From assembly GCF_001194135.2 (NCBI RefSeq), contig NC_068992.1, positions 8,905,764 to 8,969,763 of the forward strand: DNA of 64,000 nucleotides. Direction: 5' to 3'. Each line of letters opens with the position of its first letter. Positions within the stretch are counted from its first letter, which is position 1. Shown here piece after piece: positions 6,673 to 47,044 of the stretch. The position numbers were made by a program, and so were the translations under genes. The notes beneath the pieces are model-generated. The model had not been told where the DNA came from. It was given only the letters and a program-made list of their open reading frames with translations, and ran no database searches. This DNA is from Octopus bimaculoides. Taxonomy: Eukaryota.

Positions 6673-7132
6673 TGGGGAGAGATGAGAAGAAAGAACATTA
6701 AGGGCTGCTTTATTATATGGATAGAAAGAAATAAAGGAATCTTGATGAATAGTTCCAACAAAATATATTTGAAATAATGTTAAAAATTGGAAAGAAAATT
6801 AAAAAAATATAAAAAAAAACAAAACAAAAGGAAATAAAAGATAAAAAAAAAAAGCCAAACATACAGATGTAATAAACAACCACCCTGTTGAAGTTGAGCA
6901 AATGCCAGCAAGCAACAAGTTGGGAAAAATGGTGGCACATCGACATTGAAAATATATGACAGCTTACTGTAGGCAACGGGCTGCGTTGGTCAGCTGACAT
7001 GTCAACTTATACATACATACACACACACATGTATATACACACACACATGTATATACACACACACATACATACACACATGTATATTTTGTGGTGGCATTGG
7101 TGGTGGTCACTTCTACTTTTTGTTTTTCCTCA

Positions 7133-7159
7133 TCAGCTGACATTCAAATCTAGTTCAAC
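7133..7159 (-). CDS. SNX27: Candidate SNX27 terminal exon coding part (VELDLNVS* when joined directly to WQKE)
   Basis: Acceptor attgatttctttgctttcag|GTT, then GTT GAA CTA GAT TTG AAT GTC AGC TGA. No obvious donor downstream. Confidence 0.6.
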   Translation of the reverse strand, partial: VELDLNVS

Positions 7160-7517
7160 CTGAAAGCAAAGAAATCAATGAATAAGAATTTTAAAATCAA
7201 TTGTTATATACTGATACAATAAAACAGTGATAGAAATTATGCAGGAATGGTAAAGTCTGAGACTAAATTGCCATGGCAGAGTAACTACCATGCCTCATGG
7301 TAGTTATAACAGCTCTCTATGCATTGAGTTCACAACCCACTGAGGTCAACTTAGAATTTTCCTCCTTTTAGGGCCAATGAAAAAAGAACTAGTCAAATTT
7401 TGGGGTCAATCCCCCCACTGTCCTACTCCTATCTCTCTCTCTGAATCAGCTATAGGGCACAGTGTGAAAGGTTCAGCAAAGGACAAGTGAACTCTTCTTA
7501 TAGTAAAAAGTGATATA

Positions 7518-7733
7518 CAAAGGGTGCTGGAAAGTTTCTGGCTCTAAGGGTATCACAAAAAGCGTGGTCGGAGGCCCGACCTTCTGAGTTCTTTTACAGG
7601 GCTTAGAAAAACTGAAGGACCACTGCAATAAGTGTGTAAATCTGAGAGGGAAGTATGTTGAATAAAACCATAATTAGCAGATCCTCTTGTATTTTCTTTT
7701 ACCCAAAGCCAGGAACTTTTCAGCACCTCTTTG
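7518..7733 (+). mobile_element. Internally deleted mariner element/MITE (216 bp)
   Basis: TA-flanked ~30-bp TIRs (TA|CAAAGGGTGCTGGAAAGTTTCTGGCT ... AGCCAGGAACTTTTCAGCACCTCTTTG|TA). Retains transposase C-terminus LQGLEKLKDHCNKCVNLRGKYVE*. Confidence 0.85.
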
Positions 7734-8089
7734 TACAATTGGAACAGTCCAGGAACTGATGACGAAGTACAACAATAGCAGCAAGAAGGCACAAATGGGA
7801 GAGGGGAATGGAGGATTGAACTATGAGTCATAGGTTCTCCTCAAACTAGAAACCTAGCCTAAGAGTTTACAAAAGATGTCAACTCTACTGAAGGAGGCAC
7901 CCCACTAAAGAGCCAGGTTACAGAGTTAGACCACATGATAGATGAAGGTAACTACTTCTGCTACCATATGGGTGCAATTTCCAGCAGATTGAGCAACTGC
8001 ATAGATGCACCCTTGCTGGTGTGTGCAAAAATAAATGAGATATATTGCCTTGTTCTATTTAAATTATATGGGTTAAATCTTTTTGAAGA

Positions 8090-8273
8090 AATATTGTAGT
8101 AAGAAACTTGTTTCTCAATCACATGGTTCTGGATTCAGTCCCACTGCATGGCAACTTGGGTAAGTGCCTTCTACTATAGCCACGGGCCGACCAAAGCCTT
8201 GAGTGGATTTGGTAGATGGAAACTCAAAGCCCATCATATATGTATATAGATATATATTATGTATATATTTGTG

Positions 8274-8313
<40 letters not shown>

Positions 8314-8505
8314 TTTGTCCCCCACACACACATGCACACTGCTTGACGACTGGTGTTGTGTTTACATCCCTGCAAAAGAGACTGATAGAATAAGTAGCAG
8401 GCTTTAGTAAAATAAGTCTCAAGTTTGGTTTGTTCAGCTGAGACTCTTCAAGGCGGTGCCCGAGCAAGGCAGCAGTCAAAAATGACTGAAACAAGTAAAA
8501 GATAA
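8090..8505 (+). mobile_element. tRNA-derived SINE family 1 (CORE-like ccttgggcaagtg motif, internal (TG)n, tail aaatgactgaaacaagtaaaaga)
   Basis: Homologous to many copies in the window: about 20881-21332, 27022-27430, 30430-30564, 32455-32780, 33440-33600, 52445-52607, 57720-58070, 61190-61530. Confidence 0.85.
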
Positions 8506-8597
8506 AATATTTTTTAAAAAATAAATTAAAATACCCCCCCCCTTACCCGAAAAACCAACAACAACAATAAAAAAACAACTGAAGATCAGTTACTTAC

Positions 8598-8639
8598 AAA
8601 ACAACTCAATGTCCATCAATAACTCTGTCGCTATCTTCA
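8598..8639 (-). CDS. SNX27: Candidate SNX27 42-nt exon (S-EDSDRVIDGH* in phase 2, stop at 8606-8608; immediate TGA in phase 0)
   Basis: Acceptor tatatttttttatcatttcag| and donor TT|GTAAGT. Phase fits after the 13180-13223 exon. Confidence 0.55.
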
Positions 8640-9104
8640 CTGAAATGATAAAAAAATATATGGGTTATAGTTTTAAAAACACTTGGTTTAATTACTTCAA
8701 GTAAAATACATGTTCAGAAGACTTCTGTTGAGCAGAAAAAAGAAACCCTACAAGGCCCCTGGGTGTGAGATGCTTTCAGTGGAGTCCACTCTTTTGAATG
8801 TATTCAAGTCAGGTCTCAAGTCTTGAGGTAGCTTCCTCCCTTGTTATGACGGCCCAGAAAAAAATGTTATTGGGTCCTGTCCTTCCTCGACTGACTAACT
8901 ACAAAAGAGTTCTTATTTAGCCCAATGTCAACTCATACTAAGTGGACTTATGATTAAAAGTAGTTAGGTTCTGATCACCAACACCATCTTTCCAGATGAC
9001 ATCCTGTCTCTAACACACTGAATCCATCAGTGGTTTCATAAATAAACTTTTTGAAGATGGTAAAGCATTTTTTTGGAAAAATAAATGTATATAGCTCATA
9101 AAAA

Positions 9105-9427
9105 GCCCTGTAGAACATTGGGCCTCACAGAGGCAGTGACAAGCAGCCAAGACCCTTGGCGATATACCATACTTGAGAAGACCTGTGAAGCCAAGTGAGA
9201 TCATAGTCCTGGCCAATGCCGGTGTTACATAACTGCCACCTGTACTTGTGGCACATAAAAGGCACCCACTACACCCTTGGAGTGATTGACATTATGGAAA
9301 GACACCCAGCCATAGAAACCATGCCAAATCAGATTGGGACCTGGTGCAGCTCCCCAGTTTTCAGTCACACCATCCAACCCATACCAGCATGGAAAAAGAA
9401 TGTTAGATGATGATGATGATGATGATT
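9105..9427 (+). mobile_element. Older RTE-LINE 3' fragment
   Basis: RTLGLTEAVTSSQDPWRYTILEKTCEAK* is homologous to the 27661 copy. (GAT)n tail. Confidence 0.8.
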
Positions 9428-11230
9428 TATATATGTGGGTGTGTGGGTGTGTATACATATACACACACATAGAGCAAGCTTCTCTCAGTTTCTGTTGACC
9501 AGATTCACTTTGGTTGACCTGGAGCAATAGTTGAAGACACTTGCCCAAGGCGTTCACACACTGGGACTGAACTCATGACTACATGGTTGGGAAGCGAGTG
9601 TCTTAACCATACAGCCATGCTTCTGTTCAATGATACAAGATTTTAAAATACAGAAAAACAAAACAAAAAAAAAATGCAAATATAATCAAATAGTACAACA
9701 CTTAGTTTAACTATTTAAAGTAGGTTAAGACAGGAAATGTTTAGAAATCTACAGTTATCTGTGTCAAGTAGAAACAATTAAGCAGTAATAGACAGGTTTT
9801 TATTACACTAGCCAATTCTACTTTATAATTCTAAAGTCTCAAAAACTGTTTTGTAACAATCGTGTCATATTAACAACAGCTTTATCAATTCTTCTTTTTT
9901 TTTTTGCTATAATGTATAAAGTTATTTCATGAGAAAAATGTTCTTCCTGCTGCACTATACCCACCACAACAAACAGTTTTGTGTCTGCATTTACTAAGAT
10001 GCATCAGCTGCATTAACATCAGGTAATATGGTAGATTTCAAAAGCAATGGGCCCTACTCCTATTTTCCACATTGAAATGTAAGAAAGAAGTAAAATAAAC
10101 GAGTGAGGGGAAAGGGCTAGAGAGAGGAGATAGAGGGATAAGGGGAGTGGAAACTAAGAATGACCTGTGGATATATAAATATATATATGTATATATATAT
10201 AAAATATCTATATATATTTCTNNNNNNNNNNNNNNNNNNNNNNNNNNNNNNNNNNNNNNNNNNNNNNNNNNNNNNNNNNNNNNNNNNNNNNNNNNNNNNN
10301 NNNNNNNNNNNNNNNNNNNNNNNNNNNNNNNNNNNNNNNNNNNNNNNNNNNNNNNNNNNNNNNNNNNNNNNNNNNNNNNNNNNNNNNNNNNNNNNNNNNN
10401 NNNNNNNNNNNNNNNNNNNNNNNNNNNNNNNNNNNNNNNNNNNNNNNNNNNNNNNNNNNNNNNNNNNNNNNNNNNNNNNNNNNNNNNNNNNNNNNNNNNN
10501 NNNNNNNNNNNNNNNNNNNNNNNNNNNNNNNNNNNNNNNNNNNNNNNNNNNNNNNNNNNNNNNNNNNNNNNNNNNNNNNNNNNNNNNNNNNNNNNNNNNN
10601 NNNNNNNNNNNTTTTGTTTAAATAAATGGGAGGAAGGGCAACACTAAATTCCATTCAACTCCCAGTAGTTGACTGGTATCTATTTCACTGACCCGAACAA
10701 AAAAATGGAAAAGACTCAGTCAGATTTTAGCAGGTTTTGAACACAACATATTGATATGATGTTTGACTTCTTATAACTGTTATATCTGAACTGTTATAAT
10801 ATCAAACGTTCCTGATGTTCTCTTATTACTCTCCAACTGTGTATCTTCAACAAGCACTCAACGATATCGCTATTCAATAATTCCTACGACCTGTACCCTA
10901 TGACTGAGAATATGACAAGCTTCCCAGACTGTTCTATGCATGCTCATTGATACTAACGAGTCTAATTCACTTAGCCCATCACAGGGGCATACAGATTCCT
11001 CATACAACACACATGGAGAGATGCAGTCTAATACAATAAAATATTTTGTCTAGTGCACTCAATAGATTCTCTAGAGCACTGGACATGCAATACTTAGCAT
11101 GCTTCCTTTAGTGTCAGAACTTAGATCCAGCTGACGTCAACTTTACCTTTCATTCTTCTAGGATTGGTAAAATGACATGCCACTCAGATACTTAAGGTCA
11201 ACTTAACATTCCTATAAAACGTCAGCAATA

Positions 11231-11712
11231 CAGGGTGTGGTGAATATGCTGTTGTGTAAATTATGCAAAAATATAAAGAACACTGTCATCTCATTTTAAC
11301 AGATATATTCACCAAACATAAAAATATCTTGAAGTACTGAAGAGTAAATTTATTCAATAAAATTGCCATTGGCTTCAACCATGGCCTCCAGACATCTTCT
11401 GGATAGTCACCTTGTTTAAGTTGGTGAATGCTGCCATAATCCTTGACTTCAGTTCATCTTTCATGTTACAAGGAGCTTTGTTGGTCTCTCATTCAACTGC
11501 ACTCCACACATAATAATCAAGGAGGTTGCAGTCTGGGGAGTTAAGTGGCCAGATGTTAGGGGTGATGTGGTCAAAGAAATTGTCTGACAGCCATGACTGG
11601 GTTCTCTTGCTTGTGTGGCATGGTACAAAGTCCTGTTGCCAGACATAGGGTCTTCCAGCAGTCATCCTCTTGACCCAGAGCAGCACTACCTCCTCCAGGC
11701 ATTTGATGTAGA
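11231..11712 (-). mobile_element. Degenerate Tc1/mariner-superfamily transposase 3' fragment, maT/DD37D-like
   Basis: ORF 11489..11686(-) has YVWQQDFVPCHTSKRTQSWL and WPLNSPDCNLLDYYVW motifs. Ends at TA|CAGGGTGTGG. Confidence 0.8.
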
Positions 11713-12916
11713 AAAGAGTGCAGGAAAAGAAAGATGGTCATGTGAGCATCGTCCATCTTTCTTTTCCTGCATGACATTCTAAGGACTGGACATTTTCTTT
11801 TTCTCACTTCTATCTTTTCTGTTATACAAATATCAAACAGAAAAACAACAATAACTGCACACTTACATCATCATTTTACATCCATTTTCCATGCTGGCAT
11901 GGGTCGAACAATTTGAGAGGAGCTAAAAAGGCCAGGAGCTGCACCAGGCTGCCCTTCCTAATGCCAAACATACATATATACATATGTGTATATATATGTT
12001 CTGCATTCTTAAATAGAATAAATTTCAAGGACACACATCAAACTTTTTTACTAGTACATATGGACCACACTATCCAATGTATCTTTTCATTCGTTTATGT
12101 TGGCAAGGTGACTGGAAGGAGATTTAGCTGTTATTTCTAGCCGACTGAGCAACTGCATAGTGGTTCATTCTCCTACTGACATGAATAGCCACCATTAACA
12201 ATGGAAGTGAAAATGACAAAAGCTAAGCCTAGTCTGGTAGACAGTAATTATATTCTATAATCTGAATAATTGCAGCAATCAGTTATGTGAAAGGATCACC
12301 ATCCAGCTTTTAGGTCTTCGTGTCACTCATCATTTTCATATCTCTTTTGAAGTGGAAAAGAAACGGTGACAGCTTACAAAATATAATGAAAAGAAACCCT
12401 GGTAGTGTCTCAGAGACAGTCAACCAGGTTATCATCAAAGCAGTTCTTTAAATTTATACAATTCAAGAGTATAAACAAACACACACACACACACACATTC
12501 TGACATGGGAGATGGAACTGATTATTTACATAGGAAATAAAAAAAAATTTTTTTAATATCTTTTTGCTTTTATAACTTTGCTTCTGAGATGCAAATATTC
12601 AATATTCCAATACATTCATTTCATCAACCCCTGCAGATTACTGTCTTGAGTCCCAGGACTCTTAGGATTGGTTATCTGGTTTCCATGGCATCTAAGTGAC
12701 CCTGAATGGGCTACTCGTTCCCAGCTGAGTAAACTGGAACAATGTGAAACGAAGTAATTTGCTCAAGAATACAATGTACCACCTGGTCTAGGAATCAAAA
12801 CCGTGATCTTGTGACTGTGTATGAAAACCCCTTACTACAATGCCACTCAGAATTCCAATTTGGTATTGAATGAAGTTTACATGGTGGAAGTGTAACAGAC
12901 AGTTAAAAGAGCTTAC

Positions 12917-12979
12917 TGCAAAAGTAACAACACTGTTGCAAAAAGGAGTCTTTGAGGGCAACATATACAGAAGAATGGT
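12917..12979 (-). CDS. SNX27: Candidate SNX27 63-nt frame-preserving cassette exon (R-PFFCICCPQRLLFATVLLLL-H in phase 2)
   Basis: Acceptor ttttctttgcttttgcttacag| and donor CA|GTAAGC. Length divisible by 3 and open in all three frames. Supported by splice signals only. Confidence 0.4.
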
Positions 12980-13179
12980 CTGTAAGCAAAAGCAAAGAAA
13001 ACTGTGTTAAAAATAGCCATGAAGGAATAAGTCGGTGTAAGCTAGTGTCCCGATTCCAATAATCTTATTAGTAACAATGATAGCTGGTCGTAGAAAAATT
13101 GCAGCTTTCATGAGAGGTTAGTCTGTGAAATGAAAGTGGAGGAAAGGTCACATAAACCAAAGTTATACATGATGCTCAC

Positions 13180-13223
13180 CTTTCAGCAGAAGTCTGGTTC
13201 ATTTCCAAGCCACATTTAAAGGG
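13180..13223 (-). CDS. SNX27: Candidate SNX27 C-terminal cassette exon (PFKCGLEMNQTSAE + AG), 44 nt, phase 0 to 2
   Basis: Acceptor tccctttgtattttaattcag| and donor AG|GTGAGC. Open in the frame continuing from WQKE. No homology support. Confidence 0.6.
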
Positions 13224-15960: not shown

Positions 15961-16020
15961 CTCTTTCTGCCAATCAAGTTCTTCAAATATCCTTTCAAAG
16001 CTATCATACATATATACAAA
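15961..16020 (-). CDS. SNX27: SNX27 exon (FVYMYDSFERIFEELDWQKE), 60 nt
   Basis: Acceptor ttttttctag| and donor GAG|GTAAGT. Matches human [20 protein letters not shown]. Confidence 0.95.
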
Positions 16021-18415: not shown

Positions 18416-18544
18416 ATAAGTTGAATAAATTCGAACTAGTCTAGACTTCCTGCTTGGCCGGAAATATTCAAATATAAATGACATGGTTTCATCATCTATG
18501 TCATAGTTTTTTATATCAGACCATTTTATTTCTACAACTTGAGG
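18416..18544 (-). CDS. SNX27: SNX27 exon, FERM F3 (PQVVEIKWSDIKNYDIDDETMSFIFEYFRPSRKSRLVRIYSTY), 129 nt
   Basis: Acceptor tttttctatccag| and donor TAT|GTAAGT. Matches human QVIAFEWDEM...FCFEYAR...VKIFTPY. Confidence 0.95.
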
Positions 18545-18679
18545 CTGGATAGAAAAAAAAAGAAGAAGAAAAAGAATAAAACAGATATGAATATTGAAAT
18601 TAAAACGATGAAAATTAGAATATAAAATTGGATGAAAAAGAAGAAAAACATTTGCAGACAACTAAATAACAATGTTTCT

Positions 18680-18946
18680 ATCGTTGCCAGTGCCCCTGGA
18701 CTGGCTTGTGCGGGTGGCACATAAAAGACACCATTTCGAGCGTGGCCGTTTTCGTGCGGGTGACACGTAAAAGCACCCACTACACTCTCTGAGTGGTTGG
18801 CGTTAGGAAGGGCATCCAGCTGTAGAAACTCTGCCAAATCAGACTGGAGCCTGGTGTTGCCATCCGGTTTCACCAGTCCTCAGTCAAATCGTCCAACCCA
18901 TGCTAGCATGGAAAGCGGACGTTAAACGATGATGATGATGATGATG
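18680..18946 (+). mobile_element. Young RTE-LINE 3' UTR copy, truncated just after the ORF2 stop
   Basis: Reverse complement of 27661-27921 with one visible mismatch over ~260 bp. (GAT)n tail. Confidence 0.9.
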
Positions 18947-19042
18947 TAGAGAAAACCAAGAAATTAACTGTTCTCAGAATAAATTTGTTTAAATCTCTAT
19001 TGAAAGGAGTTTACAGAAACAAATATTTGCTCAAATGATTAA

Positions 19043-19228
19043 TCCTTCATCATTCAGATTATTCATTCAAATTGTTTTGAATTAATCATGCATTATTTTG
19101 TATCTTTGAGATTTCGAGGATGCCATCACTCATTTTTAGAGTGACATTGCAGGGTAGGTTTAAGAGGCTGGATCAAGTCAGTTTGAACATAAAACGGAAT
19201 ATTTGGGCCTGGTGTGGATGCTAATGGG
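19043..19228 (+). mobile_element. piggyBac-like MITE (degenerate)
   Basis: TTAA on both sides, ends TCCTTCATCATT...ATGCTAATGGG. Body homologous to 33815-34038. Confidence 0.6.
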
Positions 19229-19750
19229 TTAAACAAAATCTTCTCTTCAATCACTTGAACAATCAGCAGTATGAAAAAGCTTTTGAGTTTTTGGGGGTAT
19301 GATGTCTTGTAGTTCATTGAAACACCAGATACCGAGAGGTGGTTAACAAAGTATTAAGGACATTATGAAGGCAACCACATAAGTAATCACCTCGGTAACC
19401 CACTCATTTCACCAGCATGGAAGGTACTATAAAGTCTGCTTGTGGAACGCACAGCTGAAGTTTTGTGTGATTTTGCCAATGTTACAGGGAATCAGTGATT
19501 GTTGTAGCTTTTCTGATGTATGGACAGGTGTGTTGGCAGACTGGAGATCATTCAGCTAAAATGTTGTGTCTGCACATAAATAATCTGATGTTCCAGTTCT
19601 TCCGGCAATTCACTGTTCTTTGACAAAACTTTGCTTAAACTTAGTAAATAATAATTCTAAATAAAAATATAGCAATTAAGCAACTAAATGAAAAAAAAAA
19701 CAAACAAAAACAAACAAACAATCAAACAATTAGAAAAGAAAATCATTTAC

Positions 19751-19900
19751 TTCAATGGAACCATCTTCTTTGCATGCTTGTAATCGAAAGGCACGGATTC
19801 CAATGCTGGCCATCACATGACCTTCCTTACGAGAATCACAGGCACAATGGGGGAACACAATTTCACCGTAAGAGTCAAGTCTTCGAGCCATCTTCAAATA
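19751..19900 (-). CDS. SNX27: SNX27 exon (YLKMARRLDSYGEIVFPHCACDSRKEGHV...CKEDGSIE), 150 nt
   Basis: Acceptor actttcag| and donor GAA|GTAAAT. FPHCACDSR motif identical to human. Confidence 0.97.
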
Positions 19901-20585
19901 CTGAAAGTAAAATAACAATCCTAACAATATTAGTAGATGAATGATAAGCATATTTATTCAAATAGAGGCCACAAACTGGTTTTGTGGCTGAAGCAGAGCT
20001 TCACCTTACCAGTAGGCAACAGGGTAGGGGAACAGATGTAGAACAAGCATAGATAACCTTTGCTGAGAAGCAGGCTACATGATACACTGGCTTATCATAT
20101 GGTCAGGCTGCATAACTAAAAAACATTCAAGGCAGTTTTCCATTAGGCATGCCATTCAGAAAGTACTGTGGGCCACAGGTAACCCATGACTGATGTAAAA
20201 TGTGTAATATGACATGCTAGAAATAGCTGTCCATTTCATTACGACGAAAACAGAACTTGACTAGGAACATTGCTAATGGAGAATTCATCTAAGTAAATGT
20301 GAATATTGTCCATTGTACATATTGAGTTTGCAGAACATAATTAGGATTTATTGCAACGAATCAGAGCCAACGTATGTATTTGTGTATTACATGTACTGAG
20401 TGCTCTTTATCTCATTCAAACTTCTAAACATAAACACACACATACACATTTGCATGATTCCCAATAACAAATTCACACAGCAACAGGAGACTTCTCCAGT
20501 ATCATATATATATGTAAATATGTATTCTCTCTCTCTCTATCTCTCTCTCACACATGTTCATATTCATTAAAGAGAAATAACTCAC

Positions 20586-20675
20586 CTCGTTAACCTTGGC
20601 AGCTTCTTGCAAAGCTTTTAACTCATACAACCGGTCACCAGCTTTTATCAAACTCCTACTGACATCATCTATTGC
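20586..20675 (-). CDS. SNX27: SNX27 exon (AIDDVSRSLIKAGDRLYELKALQEAAKVNE), 90 nt
   Basis: Acceptor ttttgaattcag| and donor GAG|GTGAGT. Matches human AVDDVKKGYIKA. Confidence 0.93.
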
Positions 20676-20880
20676 CTGAATTCAAAAGTAAAGATATGAA
20701 TCGACAAATAAGGAACCCTTCAAGTAAGTGAGAACTTATAACAGAAAACGTAGAAGGCAATTTCACCAAAGGAATACCACACACACACATAATATATATA
20801 TATATATATCCGTTTAGTATTGACAGTTGGACGAAAGAGTACTTTATACATAGTAGAGATTAATAATATTTTTAGTTTGG

Positions 20881-21332
20881 TCCAGTTAGCTGCTTGCTAC
20901 TCTGAGTGACAGGGACGTAAACACACCNNNNNNNNNNNNNNNNNNNNNNNNNNNNNNNNNNNNNNNNNNNNNNNNNNNNNNNNNNNNNNNNNNNNNNNNN
21001 NNNNNNNNNNNNNNNNNNNNNNNNNNNNNNNNNNNNNNNNNNNNNNNNNNNNNNNNNNNNNNNNNNNNNNNNNNNNNNNNNNNNNNNNNNNNNNNNNNNN
21101 NNNNNNNNNNNNNNNNNNNNNNNNNNNNNNNNNNNNNNNNNNNNNNNNNNNNNNNNNNNNNNNNNNNNNNNNNNNNNNNNNNNNNNNNNNNNNNNNNNNN
21201 NNNNNNNNNNNNNNNNNNNNCGGCCCGAGGCAATAGTAGAAGACACTTGCCCAAGGTGCCATGCAGTGGGACTGAACCCAGAACCATGTGGTTGGTAAGC
21301 AAGCTACTTACCACACAGCCACTCCTGCGCCT
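20881..21332 (-). mobile_element. SINE family 1 copy spanning an assembly gap
   Basis: Intact head reads GGCGCAGGAGTGGCTGTGTGGTAAG ... GGTTCAGTCCCACTGC on minus. Confidence 0.85.
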
Positions 21333-21425
21333 AAGATATTTATTTTTAAACTTAAGGCAGTAGAATAAATTCCATTAATGAGAATAAAAGAGGAAGACAG
21401 AGAATGAATAAATGAAGACAATTAC

Positions 21426-21586
21426 CTGCCAGTAGAGCAAGTTGCTCACATATTCACTATAACTAAGTTGCATCTCAAGTGCTAAAGAGAATACCCATTT
21501 CCTCAGTGCTATGCAGGTTGCTGTGGCTGTACTGTAATTCTGGATATAAATATTGTGTGGAAATTCTTGTGGTTGCAATTTTCGTT
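21426..21586 (-). CDS. SNX27: SNX27 exon (ERKLQPQEFPHNIYIQNYSTATATCIALRKWVF...LLYWQ), 161 nt
   Basis: Acceptor caattcacttcag| and donor CAG|GTAATT. Matches human RKLAPNEFPHKLYIQNY...RKWLF. Confidence 0.96.
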
Positions 21587-22225
21587 CTGAAGTGAATTGA
21601 GAAAATATAAAGAAGGTAAGTTTACATATCCATTTCTCAGTTTATTAAGTTCACATTTTGGGGATATCGTGAATGTAGATATACAAAATTCCATTTCAAA
21701 GTAGAGAGTACAGAATATAAAGAGATTTTTACATTTTTACAACACAAATTTGGGGGTCAGACTTAGGTGCTTTAATTAATATCTGAGCATATCACTTTTG
21801 CTGCAAAAATATCTTGAAAATTTATATTTTCAAATTGAATATCAAGAAAGAAAAAAATTTTAAAAAAAGAAGCCTATTGACAATTTCTGTATCTTGGTAT
21901 ACTTTCAGTAAATTACTTATTGGTGATTCCTGAAATAAAAGGGATTGCTTCAGATGGTGGAGGTTTGACCTGAGGGAGATTTGGTTGCTAATTCTAGAAG
22001 GTTGAAAATCTCCACTAGAAACATCAGATCTCTACTCTTCTTCACAGAACATTTTGCTCTAATTTAATAGATTAATTAACTTGAAGAATTTAAGATATGG
22101 CACTTAGTCATATTCTAATCCCATTTGCAACTTGTGTTCATAGAACATAATTCTAAAACAGGGAAAACAAAAAGCAGAAAGAAACACAAACAGGTTGAGA
22201 AAGGAACTTAAATATGATATCTCAC

Positions 22226-22304
22226 CAAAATTATAGTCCACCGTTTCAAAAAGATAAAAAAACTTGGATGATGTATTATCAATCTGTAATTTGTTGCATA
22301 CAGC
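22226..22304 (-). CDS. SNX27: SNX27 exon (AVCNKLQIDNTSSKFFYLFETVDYNF), 79 nt
   Basis: Acceptor tttcctttcag| and donor G|GTGAGA. Bridges phase 0 to phase 1. Matches human YFALFEV segment. Confidence 0.9.
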
Positions 22305-22711
22305 CTGAAAGGAAAATAAAATGCATTAGTCATTGTTCAGAGGAACTGAAGAAAATTAAAATAAAATTAACTGAAAAAAAACGCGATTCTATTCTGAATA
22401 GTGCCATACTTTAATTAGTAAATAATATATACCACGATTGTCTCCCTTAGCTTTGCACACAGCAACATACATAGACGTCTGAGGAGCTTCAACGTTACAA
22501 ATACGGCCTACTACGGAGGAGCTAGAGTTTTCAGACATCAGACTGTGGCCAAGCTAGGGCACTCACTGAAGGCGTTTTAGTCACTCCTATCAAACTAACT
22601 AATTACTTTACTGACACCTATTTATCGAATAGTTACGTTAACTTTTAAAATACAGGAATGCAACTCGATACAGTTTTACACCAATACGCCCTTAGTAAAA
22701 GTACACCAACG

Positions 22712-23040
22712 TCGAGGGTTCTAGTTGATCCGATCAACGGAACAGCCTGCTCATGAAATTAACGTGCAAGTGGCTGAGTACTCCAGACATGTGGACCCTT
22801 AATGTAGTTCTTAAGGAGATTCAGCGTGACACAGAGTGTGACAAGGCTGGCTCTTTGAAATACAGGTACAACAGGAAGAAAGAGTGAGAGAAAGTTGTGG
22901 TGAAAGAGTACAACAGGGTTCGCCACCATCCTCTGCCGGAGCCTTGTGGAGCTTTAGGTATTTTCCCTCAATAAACACTCACAATACCCGGTCTGGAAAT
23001 CGAAACCACGATCCTACGACCGTGAGTTTGCTCCCCTAAC
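22712..23040 (-). mobile_element. Second copy of the 48371-48773 SINE family
   Basis: Reverse-complement match over head and body (gtcgagggttctagttgatc, caacagggttcgccacc, gaaatcgaaaccacgatcc). Confidence 0.85.
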
Positions 23041-24294
23041 CCTCTTTCCTTTCTCGAGCGTCTAGTAACACTATCTGTATCAAGTCCTCACGTTGTTGAT
23101 TTTGTCTTTTTCCTTTTTTTTGAACCTATATATATATATATATATATATNNNNNNNNNNNNNNNNNNNNNNNNNNNNNNNNNNNNNNNNNNNNNNNNNNN
23201 NNNNNNNNNNNNNNNNNNNNNNNNNNNNNNNNNNNNNNNNNNNNNNNNNNNNNNNNNNNNNNNNNNNNNNNNNNNNNNNNNNNNNNNNNNNNNNNNNNNN
23301 NNNNNNNNNNNNNNNNNNNNNNNNNNNNNNNNNNNNNNNNNNNNNNNNNNNNNNNNNNNNNNNNNNNNNNNNNNNNNNNNNNNNNNNNNNNNNNNNNNNN
23401 NNNNNNNNNNNNNNNNNNNNNNNNNNNNNNNNNNNNNNNNNNNNNNNNNNNNNNNNNNNNNNNNNNNNNNNNNNNNNNNNNNNNNNNNNNNNNNNNNNNN
23501 NNNNNNNNNNNNNNNNNNNNNNNNNNNNNNNNNNNNNNNNNNNNNNNNNNNNNNNNNNNNNNNNNNNNNNNNNNNNNNNNNNNNNNNNNNNNNNNNNNNN
23601 NNNNNNNNNNNNNNNNNNNNNNNNNNNNNNNNNNNNNNNNNNNNNNNNNNNNNNNNNNNNNNNNNNNNNNNNNNNNNNNNNNNNNNNNNNNNNNNNNNNN
23701 NNNNNNNNNNNNNNNNNNNNNNNNNNNNNNNNNNNNNNNNNNNNNNNNNNNNNNNNNNNNNNNNNNNNNNNNNNNNNNNNNNNNNNNNNNNNGATGTGAT
23801 AGCTACTTGCTTCTCTGGCAGGCATCAAGGAAGCCCTTAAACTTCCATTACCAAACTACAACTTAATCAGCGGCTGCTAAGCTGAATGACAGGAATTGTG
23901 AAACCAAGCATCATCATAAATAAAACCTTTTTATTATGTTGTTAATTGTTCTAATGTCTCTTCATATATAATGCTGTTGAAAGGTGATAGAGAGAGACTA
24001 AAGTCTCTATGACAACTATCACTATATCGCAATTATTTTACAGACATTTCCTTTGCTAGAGCAGGGGTTAAACTCGTGTGTGCCAGGACAGTTTTCTTCA
24101 CGTTTGCCTTATCCTTTATATATCCTCTCGATAACTTTCCTTGCTCTCATTTCGTCTTCCATCATCTTTTGTTAGGTCTGTTTCTGTCTTGGTGTTTATA
24201 GTATTACGGAATTAAAACGTTATAAACTGAAAATATGCAAATGATTGTATCCCAATGTCTTTATCGATTTTAGCTGTAATTACAATAACCAAAG

Positions 24295-24560
24295 ATATAG
24301 TGCACATAGCCTAGTGGTTAGGCTGTTGCACTCATGATTGTGAGATTGTAGTTTCAATTCCTAGCTCAAGTGGTGCATTGTGTTCTTAAGCAAAACACTC
24401 CATTTCACATTACTTTGCAATCACTGTCATCTGATATATGGTACACTGCACTTGTACAGGTAATGTCAATTTGATGGATAGAGTGACCTAAAGAACAGCA
24501 CAAACATTTGATCACCATAAACAGATCCTCTGTTCAGGTTGCTCAACAAAAAACTGTAGA
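24295..24560 (+). mobile_element. tRNA-derived SINE family 4 (degenerate)
   Basis: tagcctagtggttagg (A box-like) ... gtttcaattcc (B box-like), then gtgttcttaagcaaaacact. A reverse copy lies at about 12690-12830. Confidence 0.6.
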
Positions 24561-24856
24561 ATCATCTTTTTTAGAGTCAAGATACAAACTAAAAGAAGTG
24601 TTACAGCTGTGAAGCGGCCGAATGAGGAAAGGACAAATGACCGGCATCAGCACTCAGTAGATAGGAACAATTTCAAAGTGGAATTATTTTGCTGTAAAGA
24701 ATAAGACATCTAAGGTTTCAGGCAGATTCTGTGATGAAAGATTTTGTATAAAATGTTAAGATTTTTCTTTGTTCATGGTAAAATAATTTATTCTACTATG
24801 GCAACTTTTGGTTATTATACTGGTCAGAAAGAAGAGAGGAATCTGAAACCACTCAC

Positions 24857-24961
24857 CTGATAAACCTTTTCTGTGTTATCTGTCCTTCGTATTGTGACAA
24901 TACAAAGTGAATGATCAGGTAAGGAAACTTTCAACTCAACTTCATTGCAGCCACCATTTTC
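24857..24961 (-). CDS. SNX27: SNX27 exon, FERM F1/RA-like start (ENGGCNEVELKVSLPDHSLCIVTIRRTDNTEKVYQ), 105 nt
   Basis: Acceptor ttattgtag| and donor CAG|GTGAGT. Matches human DVELRVALPDG...TDQVYQ. Confidence 0.93.
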
Positions 24962-25045
24962 CTACAATAAAGCAGACAGTTACACAAATGAAGACAAGCA
25001 TATATATATATATATACATACAAACACACACACACACACACACAC

Positions 25046-25102
<57 letters not shown>

Positions 25103-25549
25103 AACACACACACACACACACACATAAATATTGAACAATGAGAATGAGTGCTCAAAACTACATTGATGGATAAAGGATTCTTTATTTGTCTGTTAAGGCT
25201 ACCATTGGTTTCATGTGAAAGAATATCTCAACAATTATGCAAGCCAATCACATAGATAAAATGGAGATGTACACCAATTTTTGTGATTGGCTTAAATAAT
25301 TATTGAGATATTTCTTTACATGGCAATAAGATGTAATTTTCTCTGAACATATTTTGTTGCTAAATACTCTGCATTTCTTAAAAATCTGCAAAAAAATAGC
25401 TGGATTTACGTGTCATGCATGAGGATTTACTTGGGGTAAGTATTCTACTCACATTTACTGGTATCTGATTGTTGAACATTTAACCAAATTCTTTTAATAC
25501 TGAGTGCTTTATTGATATCTGCCAGCATTTTTTAATCCTATTTTTACTT

Positions 25550-25625
<76 letters not shown>

Positions 25626-26558
25626 ATATATGTATATATATACAGTTTTTAACTTCGTTTAACACACTATTTAACAAATAGGATGAGCAGACTACCAGAC
25701 TGACTTGCCCAGACGTGATAACATAAATATTGGAAGGCAACGCATGAAATATGTATGTGTCTATGTATATTGGATGGTCAAGGCTGGAAAATCTTTGGTT
25801 GTATAGGTCTGCTCATCTGAGGCTAAATAACAACTTCAATGTTAAAATAACAGAGCTTCAAAGGAGCTGTAAAAGAATAGGAGAAGCTAGTATCTCCTAT
25901 TTAAGGGTCAGCAAGAGAGGGAGAGAAAGAGATGAACACACACACACACACAAACAATAATATATGCCTTTCCTTTTGCCAATTCTTACCTGTTTGCAAG
26001 TGAGGTAATATAGAGTCTGATGCGCTTCCATAAGGCTTTGGCTCTGTAGGCATGAAACTTTAGGCAACTCTATATAAGATTTTGTTGTAATAATTACTGC
26101 TCCATTTTTTAGAGTGTGCTTCTTTCTGATATGTGTTTTTTTATTAACTATATATATATATATTTTTATATATATAATGATGGCCACAAAAGTGGACATT
26201 TAATGTGCTAGAAATAGACCACATGTTGTGTCTACTAAGACCTAATAGTTCTCAAAAGAAATTCATCGAAATACCATTTAATGCCAGTTACCCATGTTGG
26301 CACAAATTGAACTACTAACACTGGTTGAGCCATAAGGAAGAATAACAGGATACACAAATATGGAAAAAGAAAGAGGTACAAGAAAAAGAGAGTAAAGAAA
26401 AGACAAAAACAAAAACGAGGAAGAGAAAGACGAACAGAAAGAGAGGAAGAGATAGAAGAATAAGGAGAAACAAATAATGTAAGACGTGAAAGAAGTGTTG
26501 GAAAGTAATTACATGTAGAAGCAGAAAACAAACAATTTCATGGTTTGTCAGTACTTAC

Positions 26559-26629
26559 CATATGGGAATCACTGGCTGCCAAGAATTCTTGAACTGTTTC
26601 ACTTTCTCCAATGACTCGTACTGCACAAA
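26559..26629 (-). CDS. SNX27: SNX27 exon, PX end (VCAVRVIGESETVQEFLAASDSHM), 71 nt
   Basis: Acceptor tctttatag| and donor ATG|GTAAG. Matches human VCSIRVIGESDIMQEFL. Confidence 0.93.
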
Positions 26630-27021
26630 CTATAAAGACAGAAGAAATATCATTGATCTTTGATAATTACTGATTTAAATGGACAACACAGCATATATGT
26701 GCCAACAAGGAAGCTAACATATAGTTGCTGAAATCTGCTAGAAACAGCAATGGAATCTCTCACAAATTACATACTAATGCTTTAAAAAGAGAAGAACAGA
26801 CATTGAACAAAATGTCACCTTTAGTATCAAGATTAATTGTTGTTGTTGTTGTTGTCACCAACATCGTCATGGGTTTAACAACTGATTTTTTTTTTCCTAG
26901 ACATATATTTTACAGATGCTTTATTTGAAAAACTGTGAATGTCAAAGAGAAGTGATAATGCAGGTAAACAACAAAAATGGCAACCGAATACACAATGTCG
27001 AGAGTATGTTGAATGCTTTAG

Positions 27022-27430
27022 TCTTTTATTCTTTTACTTGTTTCAGTCATTTGACTGCAGCCATGCTGGAGCACTGCCTTAAGAGGTTTTAGTCAAAACA
27101 AATTGACCCCCAGGACTTATTCTTTGTAAGTTTAGCACTTATTCTATCGGTCTCTTTTGCTGAACTGCTATGGTACAGGGATGTAAACACACCAACATCA
27201 GTTGTCAAGTAATGGAGGGGGGAGGACAAACACAGACACAAACACAAATATATACATATATGTATATGACAGGCTTCTTTCAGTTTCCGTCTACCAAATC
27301 TACTTACAAGGCTTTGGTTGGCCCAAGGCTATAGTAGAAGACACCTGCCAAAGGGGCCACACAGTGGGACTGAACCCAGAACCATGTGGTTGGGAAGCAA
27401 GCTTCTTACCACACAGCTACACCTGTCCCT
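27022..27430 (-). mobile_element. SINE family 1 copy
   Basis: Tail tcttttacttgtttcagtcatttgactgcagccatgctggagcac through head ccacacagctacacc. Confidence 0.85.
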
Positions 27431-27660
27431 TTGGTTGCTATTATGTCTACCAAATTTCATCTACAAAGCATTGGTCAGTATGAGACTATAGTACAAGACA
27501 TTTGCCAGACAGTAGAAATGAATTTAAAACCTCATACCCCATCACACATACACATTGCAAAACTATGTTAGCTGCTCCAGCTATAAACCTAATCAGTGTA
27601 TAGAAGGAGATGATTTCACATGATTATCGATCAGTTCACTGTCACAAGATTACCCAATCT

Positions 27661-28056
27661 CATCATCATCATCGTTTAACGTCCGCTTTCCATGCTAGCA
27701 TGGGTTGGACGATTTGACTGAGGACTGGTGAAACCGGATGGCAACACCAGGCTCCAGTCTGATTTGGCAGAGTTTCTACAGCTGGATGCCCTTCCTAACG
27801 CCAACCACTCAGAGAGTGTAGTGGGTGCTTTTACGTGTCACCCGCACGAAAATGGCCACGCTCGAAATGGTGTCTTTTATGTGCCACCCGCACAAGCCAG
27901 TCCAGGGGCACTGGCAACGATCTTACTTGGCTTGCCGGGTCTTCTCACGCACAGCACATTTCCAAAGGTCTCGGTCCGTAGTCATCGCCTCGGTGAGGCC
28001 CAATGTACGAAGGTCTTGCCTCACCACCTCAGCCCAGGTCTTCCTGGGCCTACCCC
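27661..28056 (-). mobile_element. Young 5'-truncated RTE-clade LINE: ORF2 C-terminus, 3' UTR and (GAT)n tail
   Basis: RGRPRKTWAEVVRQDLRTLGLTEAMTTDRDLWKCAVREKTRQAK* (ORF 27923..28147), then a 3' UTR ending GGAAAGCGGACGTTAAAC(GAT)n. Confidence 0.9.
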
Positions 28057-28295
28057 TTAATCTAAATAAACAATAGCAAGCAGATGATTGAGATATTGAG
28101 TTATCAATTCTCAGACCAAGGGTCCTAGTCGATACGCTTGCAATCAAGGGAAAGACTAAGCTAAAAGCACCTTAGAGCCAGGTGGTTAGGGTATGGAACT
28201 GAATGACAGATTATGTCTGCTTCCGATTGAGGGAAAAAAAGTTACTTTTTAAAAATGAAAAAAGTTAGAAAACAAAACTAAGTTTAAAAACCAAC

Positions 28296-28488
28296 CTTTT
28301 TCTAGATACTGTTCCAAACCTCTCCGCCGGGCATCGAGTTGTTGATCAGACAATGTGAAAAGTTTTTTACCAGGAAGTTTGGGGAAATTGAAATCTGTAA
28401 ATTCTCTTTTCAACTGACTGTGTAAGCAATCAAACTCTCGATACCTCCGTGAACACAAATGACGCCCAGCCATATAAATGTTAAACAC
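28296..28488 (-). CDS. SNX27: SNX27 exon, PX domain core ([19 protein letters not shown]...[14 protein letters not shown]), 193 nt
   Basis: Acceptor atttcag| and donor G|GTTGGT. RRYREF, PKLPGK and [11 protein letters not shown] motifs. ORF 28249..28488(-). Confidence 0.97.
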
Positions 28489-28553
28489 CTGAAATTATAT
28501 GAGCACACATTATATGTTAAATGTAAATCTCATTTCATATACATACATATATA

Positions 28554-28737
28554 CATCATCATCATCATCATCATCATCGTTTAACGTCCGCTTTCCATGC
28601 TAGCATGGGTTGGACGATTTGACTGAGGACTGGTGAAACCGGATGGCAACACCAGGCTCCAGTCTAATTTGACAGAGTTTCTACAGCTGGATGCCCTTCC
28701 TAACGCCAACCACTCAGAGAGTGTAGTGGGTGCTTAC
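28554..28737 (-). mobile_element. Young RTE 3' tail copy with 12-bp TSD ACATACATATAT
   Basis: 158-bp core differs from the 27661 copy at 2 positions. TSD at 28541-28552 and 28738-28749. Confidence 0.9.
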
Positions 28738-29039
28738 ACATACATATATGCAATATTGTGCATATCTGTGTGTGTGTGTGTGTGTGCACATGCATACATA
28801 CAATGAGCAGGATGATTGTTAATGGTTTGTTGTTAATGATATATATATACAAATCAGGCTGAAGAAAAAAAAAAAAATATATATATATATATATATAGAT
28901 ATAGAGAGAGAGAGAGAGAGAGAGAGAGGACAGTGAAGAACCAAGTAAGGTAAAAAAAAAACTATGATGTCCCTCACACCACAGTCAAATGATTCTGCCG
29001 ACACTTCAGTTGGCCCTTCAATGCCTCCTCTGTGTAAAC

Positions 29040-29310
29040 GAATCCCTCATTTCCAGTATAAACAGCCCTGTACGGACATATGATGCTTATGGAATGGACA
29101 GTTGATTGAAAAAGTGACAAATGATCCGTGTTGGAGGAATCTGCAGAGGAGGAAGACCGGAGAAGACATGGGGAAAAGTGGTAAAGGCTGATCTTAAAAG
29201 GTCTAAATTTCATCAAGCTGACAAATGACTACAACAAGTGTTAAAGAAACACCTGCCCAACCACCCATGCAAGCATGGAAAAGTGAATGGCAGAATAGTG
29301 ATGATAATAA
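29040..29310 (+). mobile_element. Old RTE-type LINE ORF2 C-terminal fragment
   Basis: RGGRPEKTWGKVVKADL motif and a degenerate catgcaagcatggaaaag tail. Confidence 0.6.
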
Positions 29311-30429
29311 AATGCTGGGTCATCTTCGAATACAACATTCTACATTTCAAGTTTTAAATTAACTGTCAAGACATCCAATGTAAATGGTAGTAGACAAAAC
29401 AAGCACTAATTTGAGACAAAAAGGAACAATAAGCCAACTAATGTCAGTAGGTGTGTTGCTCTGTTTCAGTTTTAAATTGATGCTTAAAATGTCTACATAC
29501 CAATTTGAATGGTATCTTTGAAATAGAAAGAAAGAGAGAAAAAAAATTTAGAGTAAAGAAATGTAGAAATATTAATTAGATGTTGTTAGATATTTTCCTG
29601 GATATATGACAGGAAAATTACTGGAAAATTATGTTTCAACAAGAAATATACTTGAAACTTTATTCAACAATAATAATTTTATACAGAATGGTTTTCCAAT
29701 TTATTCTAAAAATGATTGAAAATTTTTTTAATCAAATCAACACCTATTTTGTTTTTTAGTTACTTTTTTTTTTTAACTCCACCACAGATTTAATGGTAAG
29801 AAATAAGGAATAATGATATTGATTCTTTTCCCAAAGTTACATTTACAGAATAAGGTGCTTTGAGAATTCAATATCATACCATAATAGCACATTTTCTTCC
29901 CATCAAAATGCATTGGGTATGTTGAAGTACCCATCACATACCCATTAAACAGTTCACTGTGAAATTAATTCTCAACGTTATTCTCAATAATGGTATCAAA
30001 TACCTACTAAAAAATAGAATTGGTATATTCTGCTAGTCACACTGCTTCAAAAAACTTGACACATCTCACCAAAATTAGTTTCAAACCTGACAATCCTCAA
30101 CAAGAGAGAGGTTGGTATATCTATCTGATTTCTACAGTAAAAGGGTTAATCATAATATAAACTGATTCCAGAAATTAGCTATTTTCTTTTATTCCTCAAC
30201 CTCAGAAAGGTGAAAACCAAAGCTGACCACGATGAGATTTGAATTTAGAACATCAAAAGGCGAGAGATGCAGGAGTGGCTGTGTGGTAAGTAGGTGAAAC
30301 TCAGAGTAACAAGAGACTTCTTGACCACAATAAAATATACATTATTAATCTCTACTATGGTATTGAGTACTCTTTATTTTTGAAAACATATCTCTGCAAA
30401 TTTTCGTTAAAAAAGTATGCATTATTAAG

Positions 30430-30564
30430 AAATCCACTCACAAGGCTTTGGTCAGCCTGAGACTATAGTAGAAGACACTTGCCCAAGGTGCCAAGCAGTG
30501 GGACTGAACCTGGAACCATGTGGTTGGTAAGCAAGCTACTTACCACACAGCCACTCCTGCATCT
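30430..30564 (-). mobile_element. SINE family 1, 5' half
   Basis: gaagacacttgcccaaggtgcc ... ctacttaccacacagccactcctgcatct. Confidence 0.85.
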
Positions 30565-32230: not shown

Positions 32231-32454
32231 TCTATTAAAATATACTGCTTTTATTTCAATTAAATGTGAAAATAGGGAAGAATTAAGTAAAATAACTTAG
32301 CTATTTATTAAGCTAAAATCTGGAACATAAATTGTCATGAAAAGCATTATTTAAATGGTTTTAAAACAGGGAGTTTTTGTCACAGAACCAGAGATGGTCT
32401 CCAGTGGTTTGGTATCAAAAGAGCTGGAAGTAGATGATGACAGACTACGGCCAT

Positions 32455-42077: not shown

Positions 42078-42138
<61 letters not shown>

Positions 42139-46957: not shown

Positions 46958-47044
<87 letters not shown>

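What the first reader, a model, noticed from the sequence alone, without database searches (positions are those of the whole stretch)
7133..13223. Cluster of small exons that could give SNX27 a combinatorial set of C-termini
Seen: after the WQKE exon, four segments have strong acceptors (three also have strong donors) and interlocking phases: 13223-13180 (0 to 2), 12979-12917 (63 nt), 8639-8598 and the terminal exon at 7159. Predicted tails: KE-VELDLNVS* (all skipped); KE-PFKCGLEMNQTSAESEDSDRVIDGH*; KE-PFK...AE-RLN*; KE* (direct join to 8639, which starts with TGA); plus versions including the 63-nt exon. Stops in the 42-nt exon lie 8 or 39 nt before the last junction, inside the ~50-nt window that escapes EJC-dependent NMD. 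Established: mammalian SNX27a and SNX27b diverge at the homologous WRKE junction. Inference: a conserved splicing hotspot has been elaborated independently into a richer tail switch for the retromer/PDZ cargo adaptor.
Basis: partly seen in the sequence, partly recalled or inferred. Interest (0 to 1): 0.75.

Follow-up and report, generated by a model that had tools for sequence, protein, structure and literature searches.

The report
Unproven tail exons of octopus-like SNX27
This is the ordinary 3' end of a cephalopod-type SNX27 gene: the proposed small exons are in the sequence as described, but their splice signals are no better than dozens of chance look-alikes nearby, so the eight-tail switch is unproven.

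Summary
The gene is SNX27, on the minus strand. I mapped eleven exons with PX and FERM matches; the C-terminal part matches human SNX27 FERM at E=6e-39. The last conserved exon (16020-15961) ends in phase 0 at ...DWQKE with donor GTAAGT, aligned to human WRKE, where mammalian isoforms a and b diverge.

The N gap (10222-10611) lies inside an intron next to an (AT)24 run and touches no proposed exon or frame.

The splice signals are not exceptional. The same 8.4 kb holds 63 acceptors, 57 donors and 96 pseudo-exons that score at least as well as the weakest proposed sites. Control introns have about two-thirds of that density. "Interlocking phases" adds no evidence, because every join gives some tail.

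No transcript or close cephalopod sequence could be reached, and no tail resembles any orthologue's tail.

My ranking is inference. The 7159 acceptor and the 44-nt exon are credible, the 42-nt exon is plausible, and the 63-nt exon is probably spurious. At most a simple two-way choice like the mammalian one is likely. Interest is low until junction reads exist.

The parts
15961..16020 (-). Last conserved SNX27 coding exon (FVYMYDSFERIFEELDWQKE). It ends in phase 0. Donor GTAAGT lies at 15960-15955.
   Evidence: Read. Spliced model. Aligned to the human SNX27 FERM C-terminus ...ELKWRKE. Acceptor 10.8 bits, donor 11.7 bits.
13180..13223 (-). Candidate 44-nt cassette exon (PFKCGLEMNQTSAE plus 2 nt). 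This is the most credible of the three internal candidates.
   Evidence: It has the best donor in the 8.8-kb region (AAG|GTGAGC, 11.8 bits). The acceptor scores only 4.5 bits, but a T13 run and a TTCTAAC branch-point-like motif lie upstream, with 53 nt free of AG. It is open in phase 0 and not in a window-internal repeat. There is no transcript or conservation evidence.
12917..12979 (-). Candidate 63-nt segment, probably a pseudo-exon.
   Evidence: Acceptor 10.1 bits, donor GCA|GTAAGC 5.8 bits. It is 41% T. It encodes RPFFCICCPQRLLFATVLLLL after the 44-nt exon, or TILLYMLPSKTPFCNSVVTFA directly after WQKE. All three frames are open, so it gives no frame signal.
8598..8639 (-). Candidate 42-nt exon. 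It starts with TGA in phase 0. After the 44-nt exon it reads (S)EDSDRVIDGH*, with the stop at 8608-8606. An alternative stronger donor lies at 8547.
   Evidence: Acceptor 7.2 bits. Donor TTT|GTAAGT 4.0 bits. CGG|GTAAGG after 8547 scores 11.1 bits. An acidic open 10-mer directly after an acceptor of 7 bits or more is rare: 3 of 351 acceptor-frames on this strand, one of them inside a repeat family that recurs on the plus strand. This is a mild, post-hoc hint of coding. No AATAAA or ATTAAA lies between 8598 and 6714.
6714..7159 (-). Candidate terminal exon. It reads VELDLNVS*, with the stop at 7135-7133, followed by 3' UTR. The first AATAAA is at 6714, and the true 3' end is unknown.
   Evidence: It is the best acceptor outside repeats between 15960 and about 4100 (11.3 bits, 49 nt free of AG). 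Poly(A) signals are listed. An 18-nt-period microsatellite lies at 7017-7077.
10222..10611 (.). Assembly gap of 390 N inside the putative intron, abutting (AT)24 at 10171-10217.
   Evidence: No proposed exon, junction or frame crosses it.
18416..47707 (-). Ten upstream SNX27 exons: 47707-47625, 41028-40880, 28488-28296, 26629-26559, 24961-24857, 22304-22226, 21586-21426, 20675-20586, 19900-19751, 18544-18416.
   Evidence: tblastn with a probe recalled from memory was used only to locate the exons. Boundaries were then read from the sequence. The exons give one open 423-codon frame. Pfam matches: PX 7e-20, RA 1.7e-11, SNX17/27/31 FERM F1 7e-9.

Best explanation
The region is the ordinary 3' end of a cephalopod-type SNX27 gene.

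Shown:
- The FERM domain ends at ...DWQKE in exon 16020-15961.
- That exon closes in phase 0 on a strong donor, at the intron position conserved with vertebrates and another invertebrate.

Inferred:
- The reading frame is completed by a short, fast-evolving, probably disordered tail encoded further downstream.
- The acceptor at 7159 (tail VELDLNVS*) is the best single candidate for the terminal exon.
- The 44-nt exon 13223-13180 joined to 8639 would give an acidic, Ser-rich tail, PFKCGLEMNQTSAESEDSDRVIDGH*. I put this at about 35%.
- The 63-nt segment is most likely a pseudo-exon.

So the locus makes one tail, or at most a simple either/or pair like mammalian SNX27a/b. The eight-way 'combinatorial' set is arithmetic on splice-like motifs that AT-rich cephalopod introns carry at near-background density.
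For: - Gene identity and exon chain.
- Junction homology and vertebrate divergence after WRKE.
- Intron kept after WEKE in L001.
- Site strengths and decoy counts: the candidates fall inside the range of real exons, but also inside a crowd of 63 acceptors, 57 donors and 96 pseudo-exons in the same 8.4 kb.
- Control introns and the opposite strand show 6.5-8.3 pseudo-exons per kb against 11.5 here.
- Stricter acceptor criteria still leave 14 acceptors and about 27 pseudo-exons.
- 7159 is the top non-repeat acceptor, and the 13180 donor is the top donor.
- The 63-nt segment is T-rich and encodes a hydrophobic stretch.
- No downstream segment resembles any orthologue's tail, which fits an unconstrained tail.
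Against: - No transcript evidence of any kind was available, so real use of all four segments is not excluded.
- Pseudo-exon density here is 1.4-1.8 times that of the controls.
- The phase left by the 44-nt exon is exactly the one in which the 42-nt exon reads an acidic, open peptide. That composition is seen at only about 1% of acceptor-frames.
- Several invertebrate SNX27 orthologues also carry acidic, Ser-rich tails.
- My matrix is generic, not trained on cephalopods. It may underrate sites such as 13223, whose T13 tract lies outside the scored window.
Confidence: 0.55

Rival explanations
1. There is a two-isoform switch like mammalian SNX27a/b. Skipping gives the short tail VELDLNVS* (15961>7159). 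Including the 44-nt and 42-nt exons gives the long acidic tail ...SAESEDSDRVIDGH*, with its stop 8 nt before a 3'-UTR intron. The 63-nt segment is not used.
For: - Best donor of the region at 13180, and best non-repeat acceptor at 7159.
- The exit phase of the 44-nt exon matches the only acidic open frame of the 42-nt exon.
- Acidic, Ser-rich tails occur in other invertebrate orthologues.
- No poly(A) signal lies between 8598 and 6714, so an exon starting at 8639 would need either splicing to 7159 or a long UTR.
- Mammalian precedent at the same junction.
Against: - There are no transcripts and no conservation data.
- By my rough estimate, a clean decoy like the 44-nt exon is expected about 0.5 times by chance in this region (from the rates).
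- The acidic-frame hint was chosen after the fact.
- The 8598 donor is weak on its exon side (4.0 bits).
- Introns in 3' UTRs are uncommon (my own knowledge).
Confidence: 0.28
2. All four segments are used in several combinations, giving a richer, independently evolved tail switch whose premature stops escape NMD because they lie within 50 nt of the last junction.
For: All coordinates, phases, tails and distances check out arithmetically. None of the segments lies in a window-internal repeat. Pseudo-exon density is slightly raised in this intron.
Against: - The site strengths cannot be told apart from about 96 decoys.
- The phase argument cannot fail.
- The 63-nt segment looks intronic and encodes a hydrophobic stretch.
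- The NMD rule invoked is mammalian.
- Nothing in any database reached here supports any of the tails.
Confidence: 0.04
3. The true terminal exon is none of the four. It may lie in the gap 10222-10611, at another good acceptor (for example 14289, 13734, 10116, 8724 or 7641), or the transcript may retain the intron (WQKE-VSRQFRLQNVVCDIYKQSIKHRCFL*).
For: Ten or more other acceptors pass the same strict criteria. The gap is unread. Contig ORFs that appear to read through this intron are common in the vertebrate sequences recovered (P0022, P0032, P0037, P0039).
Against: 7159 outscores every non-repeat alternative. The 15961 donor is strong (11.7 bits), which argues against constitutive retention. 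The gap is short and sits at a microsatellite.
Confidence: 0.13

Closest known systems
Mammalian SNX27a / SNX27b (rat Mrt1a/b; human isoforms ending ...WRKE-NIFQMARSQQRDVAT and ...WRKE-EY)
   Same: It is the same gene family. The intron position is the same, in phase 0, directly after the last FERM residues W-(R/Q)-K-E. The tails downstream are short. PMC2928020 reports alternative splicing of the last 15 residues.
   Different: No tail proposed here resembles either mammalian tail. Alternative use is documented in mammals and untested here. In the one assay read, both rat isoforms rescued beta2-adrenergic receptor recycling equally. So even in mammals that paper shows no functional difference between the tails.
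Invertebrate SNX27 orthologues with acidic, Ser-rich C-terminal tails (unnamed contig ORFs P0045, P0057, P0073, P0089, P0106)
   Same: Each has a tail of 20-60 residues after the FERM domain that is rich in D, E and S, like ...TSAESEDSDRVIDGH.
   Different: The likeness is in composition only, with no alignable similarity. Species and exon structures of those ORFs are unknown, and some may be intron read-through.
Pseudo-exons (decoy splice-site pairs) in long metazoan introns
   Same: These are short AG...GT-bounded segments whose site scores lie within the range of real exons. They occur here at 6.5-11.5 per kb on either strand.
   Different: At least one downstream acceptor must be real here, because the coding frame is still open at 15961.

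Membership tests
SNX27 (PDZ-PX-FERM sorting nexin) | PX domain | tested here: met
   Pfam PX E=7.1e-20, 71.8 bits against a cut-off of 21.6, on the spliced 423-aa model.
SNX27 (PDZ-PX-FERM sorting nexin) | FERM-like module (RA/F1, F2, F3) ending ...W(R/Q)KE | tested here: met
   RA E=1.7e-11 and SNX17/27/31 F1 E=7e-9. The C-terminal 116 residues match human SNX27 FERM structures 7ct1 and 8ttt at E=6e-39 and 3e-38.
SNX27 (PDZ-PX-FERM sorting nexin) | N-terminal PDZ domain | tested here: inconclusive
   Only the C-terminal part of the PDZ domain ([20 protein letters not shown]...) is found, in exon 47707-47625. The exon or exons for the N-terminal part were not found in the window. They lie beyond 64000 or in a gap.
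SNX27a/b-type alternative C-terminus | Phase-0 intron directly after W-(R/Q)-K-E | tested here: met
   GAG|GTAAGT at 15961/15960, with the frame closed. It aligns to human WRKE.
SNX27a/b-type alternative C-terminus | Two or more downstream exons used alternatively in mRNA | not testable with these tools
   No transcript data were available. Protein collections hold no ORF from this species or a close relative.
SNX27a/b-type alternative C-terminus | Tail sequence homologous to a known isoform tail | tested here: not met
   tblastn of 13 orthologue tails against window 1-16100 found nothing beyond the WQKE exon itself.
Cluster of real cassette micro-exons | Splice signals that stand out from the intronic background | tested here: not met
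   There are 96 equally good pseudo-exons in the same region, and the density is only 1.4-1.8 times that of the controls.
Cluster of real cassette micro-exons | Exons and splice sites conserved in related species | not testable with these tools
   The only cephalopod relative reached (Logan contigs L002-L011) covers two upstream exons at 75-83% nucleotide identity and nothing of the 3' end. Metagenome DNA scans gave 0 and 1 hits, the one hit being L001 again.
NMD-escaping stop upstream of a 3'-UTR intron | Stop no more than 50-55 nt upstream of the last exon junction | tested here: met
   The distances are 8 nt and 39 nt, by arithmetic on the proposed junction 8598>7159. Whether the junction is real, and whether the rule holds in molluscs, was not tested.
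aDLF motif (D/E-x-x-D-[IL]-F) that binds the SNX27 FERM domain | D-[IL]-F core with strictly conserved Phe | tested here: not met
   The short tail reads VELDLNVS, so the core is D-L-N with no Phe. The motif definition comes from PMC9038204.

The most novel reading that the evidence does not exclude
Octopus SNX27 really uses three or more alternative C-termini built from cassette micro-exons at the junction where mammals make isoforms a and b. They would include a tail-less ...WQKE* form and an acidic, phosphorylatable ...SAESEDSDRVIDGH form. The stops would sit just upstream of a 3'-UTR intron. This would be an independently elaborated tail switch on the retromer cargo adaptor.
Probability: 0.05. 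Interest if true: 0.4.

Novelty: new member of a known kind. Interest (0 to 1): 0.15.

Why it matters
If the exons are real, this would be a second, independent case of alternative C-terminal tails on SNX27 at the same intron. That would hint that the tail is a regulatory handle on endosome-to-surface recycling in neurons. Even in mammals, the one paper read here found no functional difference between the two tails in the assay it used. As things stand, the main value is cautionary. In AT-rich cephalopod introns, splice-like motifs with compatible phases occur every hundred bases or so. Such clusters should not be read as alternative exons without junction reads or conservation.

Tried and rejected
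1. Looking for cephalopod SNX27 transcripts or proteins with their C-termini.
- The word-indexed search with exons A+B+C plus the long tail returned only single-exon genomic ORFs. The closest, P0003, is 90% identical over one upstream exon.
- A tail-focused query found no candidate at all. Searches were rejected on parameter limits.
- The exhaustive representative search gave 89 hits, none above 53% identity and none from a close relative.

2. Exact look-ups of two window ORFs, hoping for RNA-seq contigs from the same species. Neither is on record.

3. Contigs of the relative (L002-L011). They are 2.1 kb or shorter and cover only the exons at 20675 and 19900.

4. Two metagenome DNA scans anchored on the WQKE exon. 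The first gave 0 hits and the second returned only L001.

5. L001's 1.3 kb downstream of WEKE. It has candidate acceptors giving AG* or VSCNALCVV..., and neither is like the octopus tails.

6. Homology of orthologue tails to anything downstream of 15961. None was found.

7. Window-internal repeats as a way to discredit the candidates. None of the four lies in a repeat. The test did remove three strong decoy acceptors (8369, 9182, 8485).

8. Rfam found no RNA family in the window.

9. The idea that VELDLNVS is an autoinhibitory aDLF-like motif. I rejected it because the invariant Phe is missing.

10. Poly(A) signals. They do not discriminate between the models.

11. A literature search for SNX27 in octopus found nothing relevant.

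12. I did not run structure prediction. A tail with no alignment depth would come out as low-confidence whatever the truth.


Full report
**What the locus is**

The finding lies at the 3' end of a gene on the minus strand. I used a human SNX27 sequence recalled from memory only as a tblastn probe to locate exons. I then read the boundaries from the DNA.

Eleven exons result: 47707-47625, 41028-40880, 28488-28296, 26629-26559, 24961-24857, 22304-22226, 21586-21426, 20675-20586, 19900-19751, 18544-18416 and 16020-15961. All have AG/GT borders and together give one open frame of 423 codons.
- The model matches Pfam PX (E=7e-20), RA (1.7e-11) and the SNX17/27/31 FERM F1 lobe (7e-9).
- Its last 116 residues match the solved human SNX27 FERM domain (7ct1, 8ttt) at E=6e-39 and 3e-38. 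Octopus-type ...ELDWQKE aligns to human ...ELKWRKE.
- The exon or exons for the N-terminal half of the PDZ domain are not in the window.

**Checking the observation**

- The WQKE exon ends at 15961 in phase 0 on GAG|GTAAGT.
- 13223-13180 is 44 nt (cag|CCC ... AAG|GTGAGC).
- 12979-12917 is 63 nt (cag|ACC ... GCA|GTAAGC).
- 8639-8598 is 42 nt (cag|TGA ... TTT|GTAAGT).
- 7159 follows ...gctttcag.

- VELDLNVS*
- PFKCGLEMNQTSAERLN*
- PFKCGLEMNQTSAESEDSDRVIDGH*
- KE*
- the four versions that include the 63-nt segment

The same script gives stop-to-junction distances of 39 and 8 nt.

**The gap**

The 390 N at 10222-10611 lie inside the putative intron between 12917 and 8639, more than 1.5 kb from any proposed exon end. 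On one side the gap abuts an (AT)24 microsatellite at 10171-10217, which is a typical assembly break. No frame or junction in the finding crosses it. It could hide an exon, and that cannot be excluded.

**Is it more than chance?**

I scored sites with a generic donor matrix (-3 to +6) and acceptor matrix (-16 to +1) against the window's base composition (33% A, 33% T).
- The 11 real exons score 4.0-12.7 bits (acceptors, mean 7.8) and 3.2-13.5 bits (donors, mean 8.9).
- The candidates score 4.5, 10.1, 7.2 and 11.3 bits (acceptors) and 11.8, 5.8 and 4.0 bits (donors).

So the candidates fall within the real range, but only one of the three donors is strong.

The 8.4 kb of read sequence between 15960 and 7160 contains 63 acceptors at 4.5 bits or more, 25 at 7.2 or more, and 57 donors at 4.0 or more. 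It contains 96 AG...GT pseudo-exons of 25-250 nt that are at least as good as the weakest candidates. Twelve pseudo-exons have a summed score at least equal to that of the 44-nt exon.

The same count in controls gives 7.3 and 8.3 per kb in the two other long introns of the gene. It gives 6.5 per kb on the whole plus strand, against 11.5 per kb here.

I then added three further requirements: at least 24 of 37 upstream pyrimidines, an AG-free zone of 20 nt or more, and a YTNAY branch motif. About 27 pseudo-exons hang on these 14 acceptors plus 8639.

The 'interlocking phases' add nothing. There is no coding constraint downstream, so any join produces some tail.

**What speaks for individual segments**
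- The acceptor at 7159 is the best one outside repeats from 15960 down to about 4100.
- The donor at 13180 is the best donor of the region. Its exon has a T13 tract and a TTCTAAC motif upstream and is open in the needed phase.
- The 42-nt exon reads EDSDRVIDGH only in the frame that the 44-nt exon hands to it. An open, acidic 10-mer right after an acceptor of 7 bits or more occurs at 3 of 351 acceptor-frames on this strand. One of those is a repeat-family copy, and that family supplies all three such hits on the plus strand.
- Several invertebrate orthologues carry acidic, Ser-rich tails.

These hints were picked after the fact. By rough estimate, a pair this tidy arises by chance about one time in ten. 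Set against a low prior for a two-micro-exon tail with a 3'-UTR intron, that leaves about 35% for the 44+42 pair being real. This figure is inference.

The 63-nt segment is 41% T and open in all three frames. It would insert RPFFCICCPQRLLFATVLLLL. I rate it a pseudo-exon.

None of the four segments lies in a window-internal repeat. Three of the best decoy acceptors (8369, 9182, 8485) do.

**Comparative evidence**

Vertebrate ORFs recovered from public assemblies end ...WRKE-EY* (P0026, P0034) or ...WRKE-NIFQMARSQQRDVAT* (P0020, P0024). PMC2928020 states that isoforms a and b differ by alternative splicing of the C-terminal 15 residues, and that both rescued beta2-adrenergic receptor recycling. 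The 'established' part of the finding therefore holds.

An invertebrate metagenome contig (L001) has ...SWEKE|gtttgt, so it keeps the same intron.

I could reach nothing closer.
- The only cephalopod relative (Logan contigs L002-L011) matches two upstream exons at 75-83% nucleotide identity, and its introns do not align.
- No ORF from this species is on record.
- No protein shares words with the tail.
- Two metagenome scans gave nothing new.
- No orthologue tail has a counterpart downstream of 15961.

**Mechanism and verdict**

Shown: the gene is SNX27, it has a conserved phase-0 intron after the FERM domain, and it needs at least one downstream exon.

Inferred: a short, unconstrained tail is most likely supplied by the exon at 7159. 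An alternative acidic tail from 13223-13180 plus 8639 is possible.

The NMD-escape argument relies on the mammalian exon-junction rule, which is not known to hold in molluscs (my own knowledge). The VELDLNVS tail is not an aDLF motif, because it lacks the invariant Phe.

The combinatorial switch is not supported by anything beyond motif arithmetic. I give it about 4-5%. If a two-way choice is confirmed, it would be a new member of a known kind, the SNX27a/b type.

Junction reads, or an alignment with other octopod genomes, would settle the matter quickly.

Noticed in passing
window ~11310-11700, minus strand: A decayed Tc1/mariner-type DDE transposase remnant lies inside the large intron (…WQQDFVPCHTSKRTQSWL…WPLNSPDCNLLDYYVW…, with frameshifts and a stop). 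A stitched translation matches the C-terminal end of Pfam DDE_3 only weakly (E=0.01, 16 bits, below the cut-off).
   Followed up: partly
window 8095-8507, 9115-9436, 9452-9623, 14383-14574, 15440-15705: Interspersed, SINE-like repeats are present in up to 9 copies within the 64-kb window. They carry some of the best-scoring decoy acceptors (8369, 9182, 8485), so they can mislead a by-eye search for exons.
   Followed up: partly
plus strand 27699, 28604, 62675; minus strand 18902: A repeated element puts a good acceptor-like site directly in front of the identical open peptide HGLDDLTEDW*. Two same-strand copies flank SNX27 exon 28488-28296.
   Followed up: no
window 28296-28488, minus strand (PX-domain exon): The exon reads [14 protein letters not shown], where vertebrate and other invertebrate orthologues have LPGKWPF(S/T)LSEQQL. 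The conserved W-P pair in the PX domain is replaced by K-L. This could be a lineage-specific change, or an assembly or editing matter.
   Followed up: no
window 47708-64000: No exon for the N-terminus and first half of the PDZ domain of SNX27 was found (best tblastn E>1). The 5' end of the gene lies beyond the window or in one of the gaps (51779-51844, 56318-56407, 60002-60193).
   Followed up: partly
proteins P0028 and P0030 (vertebrate contig ORFs): Two different vertebrate ORFs share a third continuation after WRKE, VEEEATDKDNKNCSKD, and then diverge. One continues with EY.... This may be a cassette exon between the WRKE exon and the EY exon, or conserved intron read-through.
   Followed up: no
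L001 (JGI metagenome 3300026546, contig Ga0256913_10044139), 752-1130: A metagenome contig carries two SNX27 exons of an unidentified invertebrate, separated by a 180-nt intron. It keeps both intron positions seen in the window (after ...TQY and after ...WEKE).
   Followed up: partly
window 7130-7149 and 6985-7006, minus strand: Near-identical 11-mers (ATGTCAGCTGA) lie on both sides of the 18-nt-period microsatellite 7017-7077, just after the proposed VELDLNVS stop. The first copy contains the stop codon itself.
   Followed up: no
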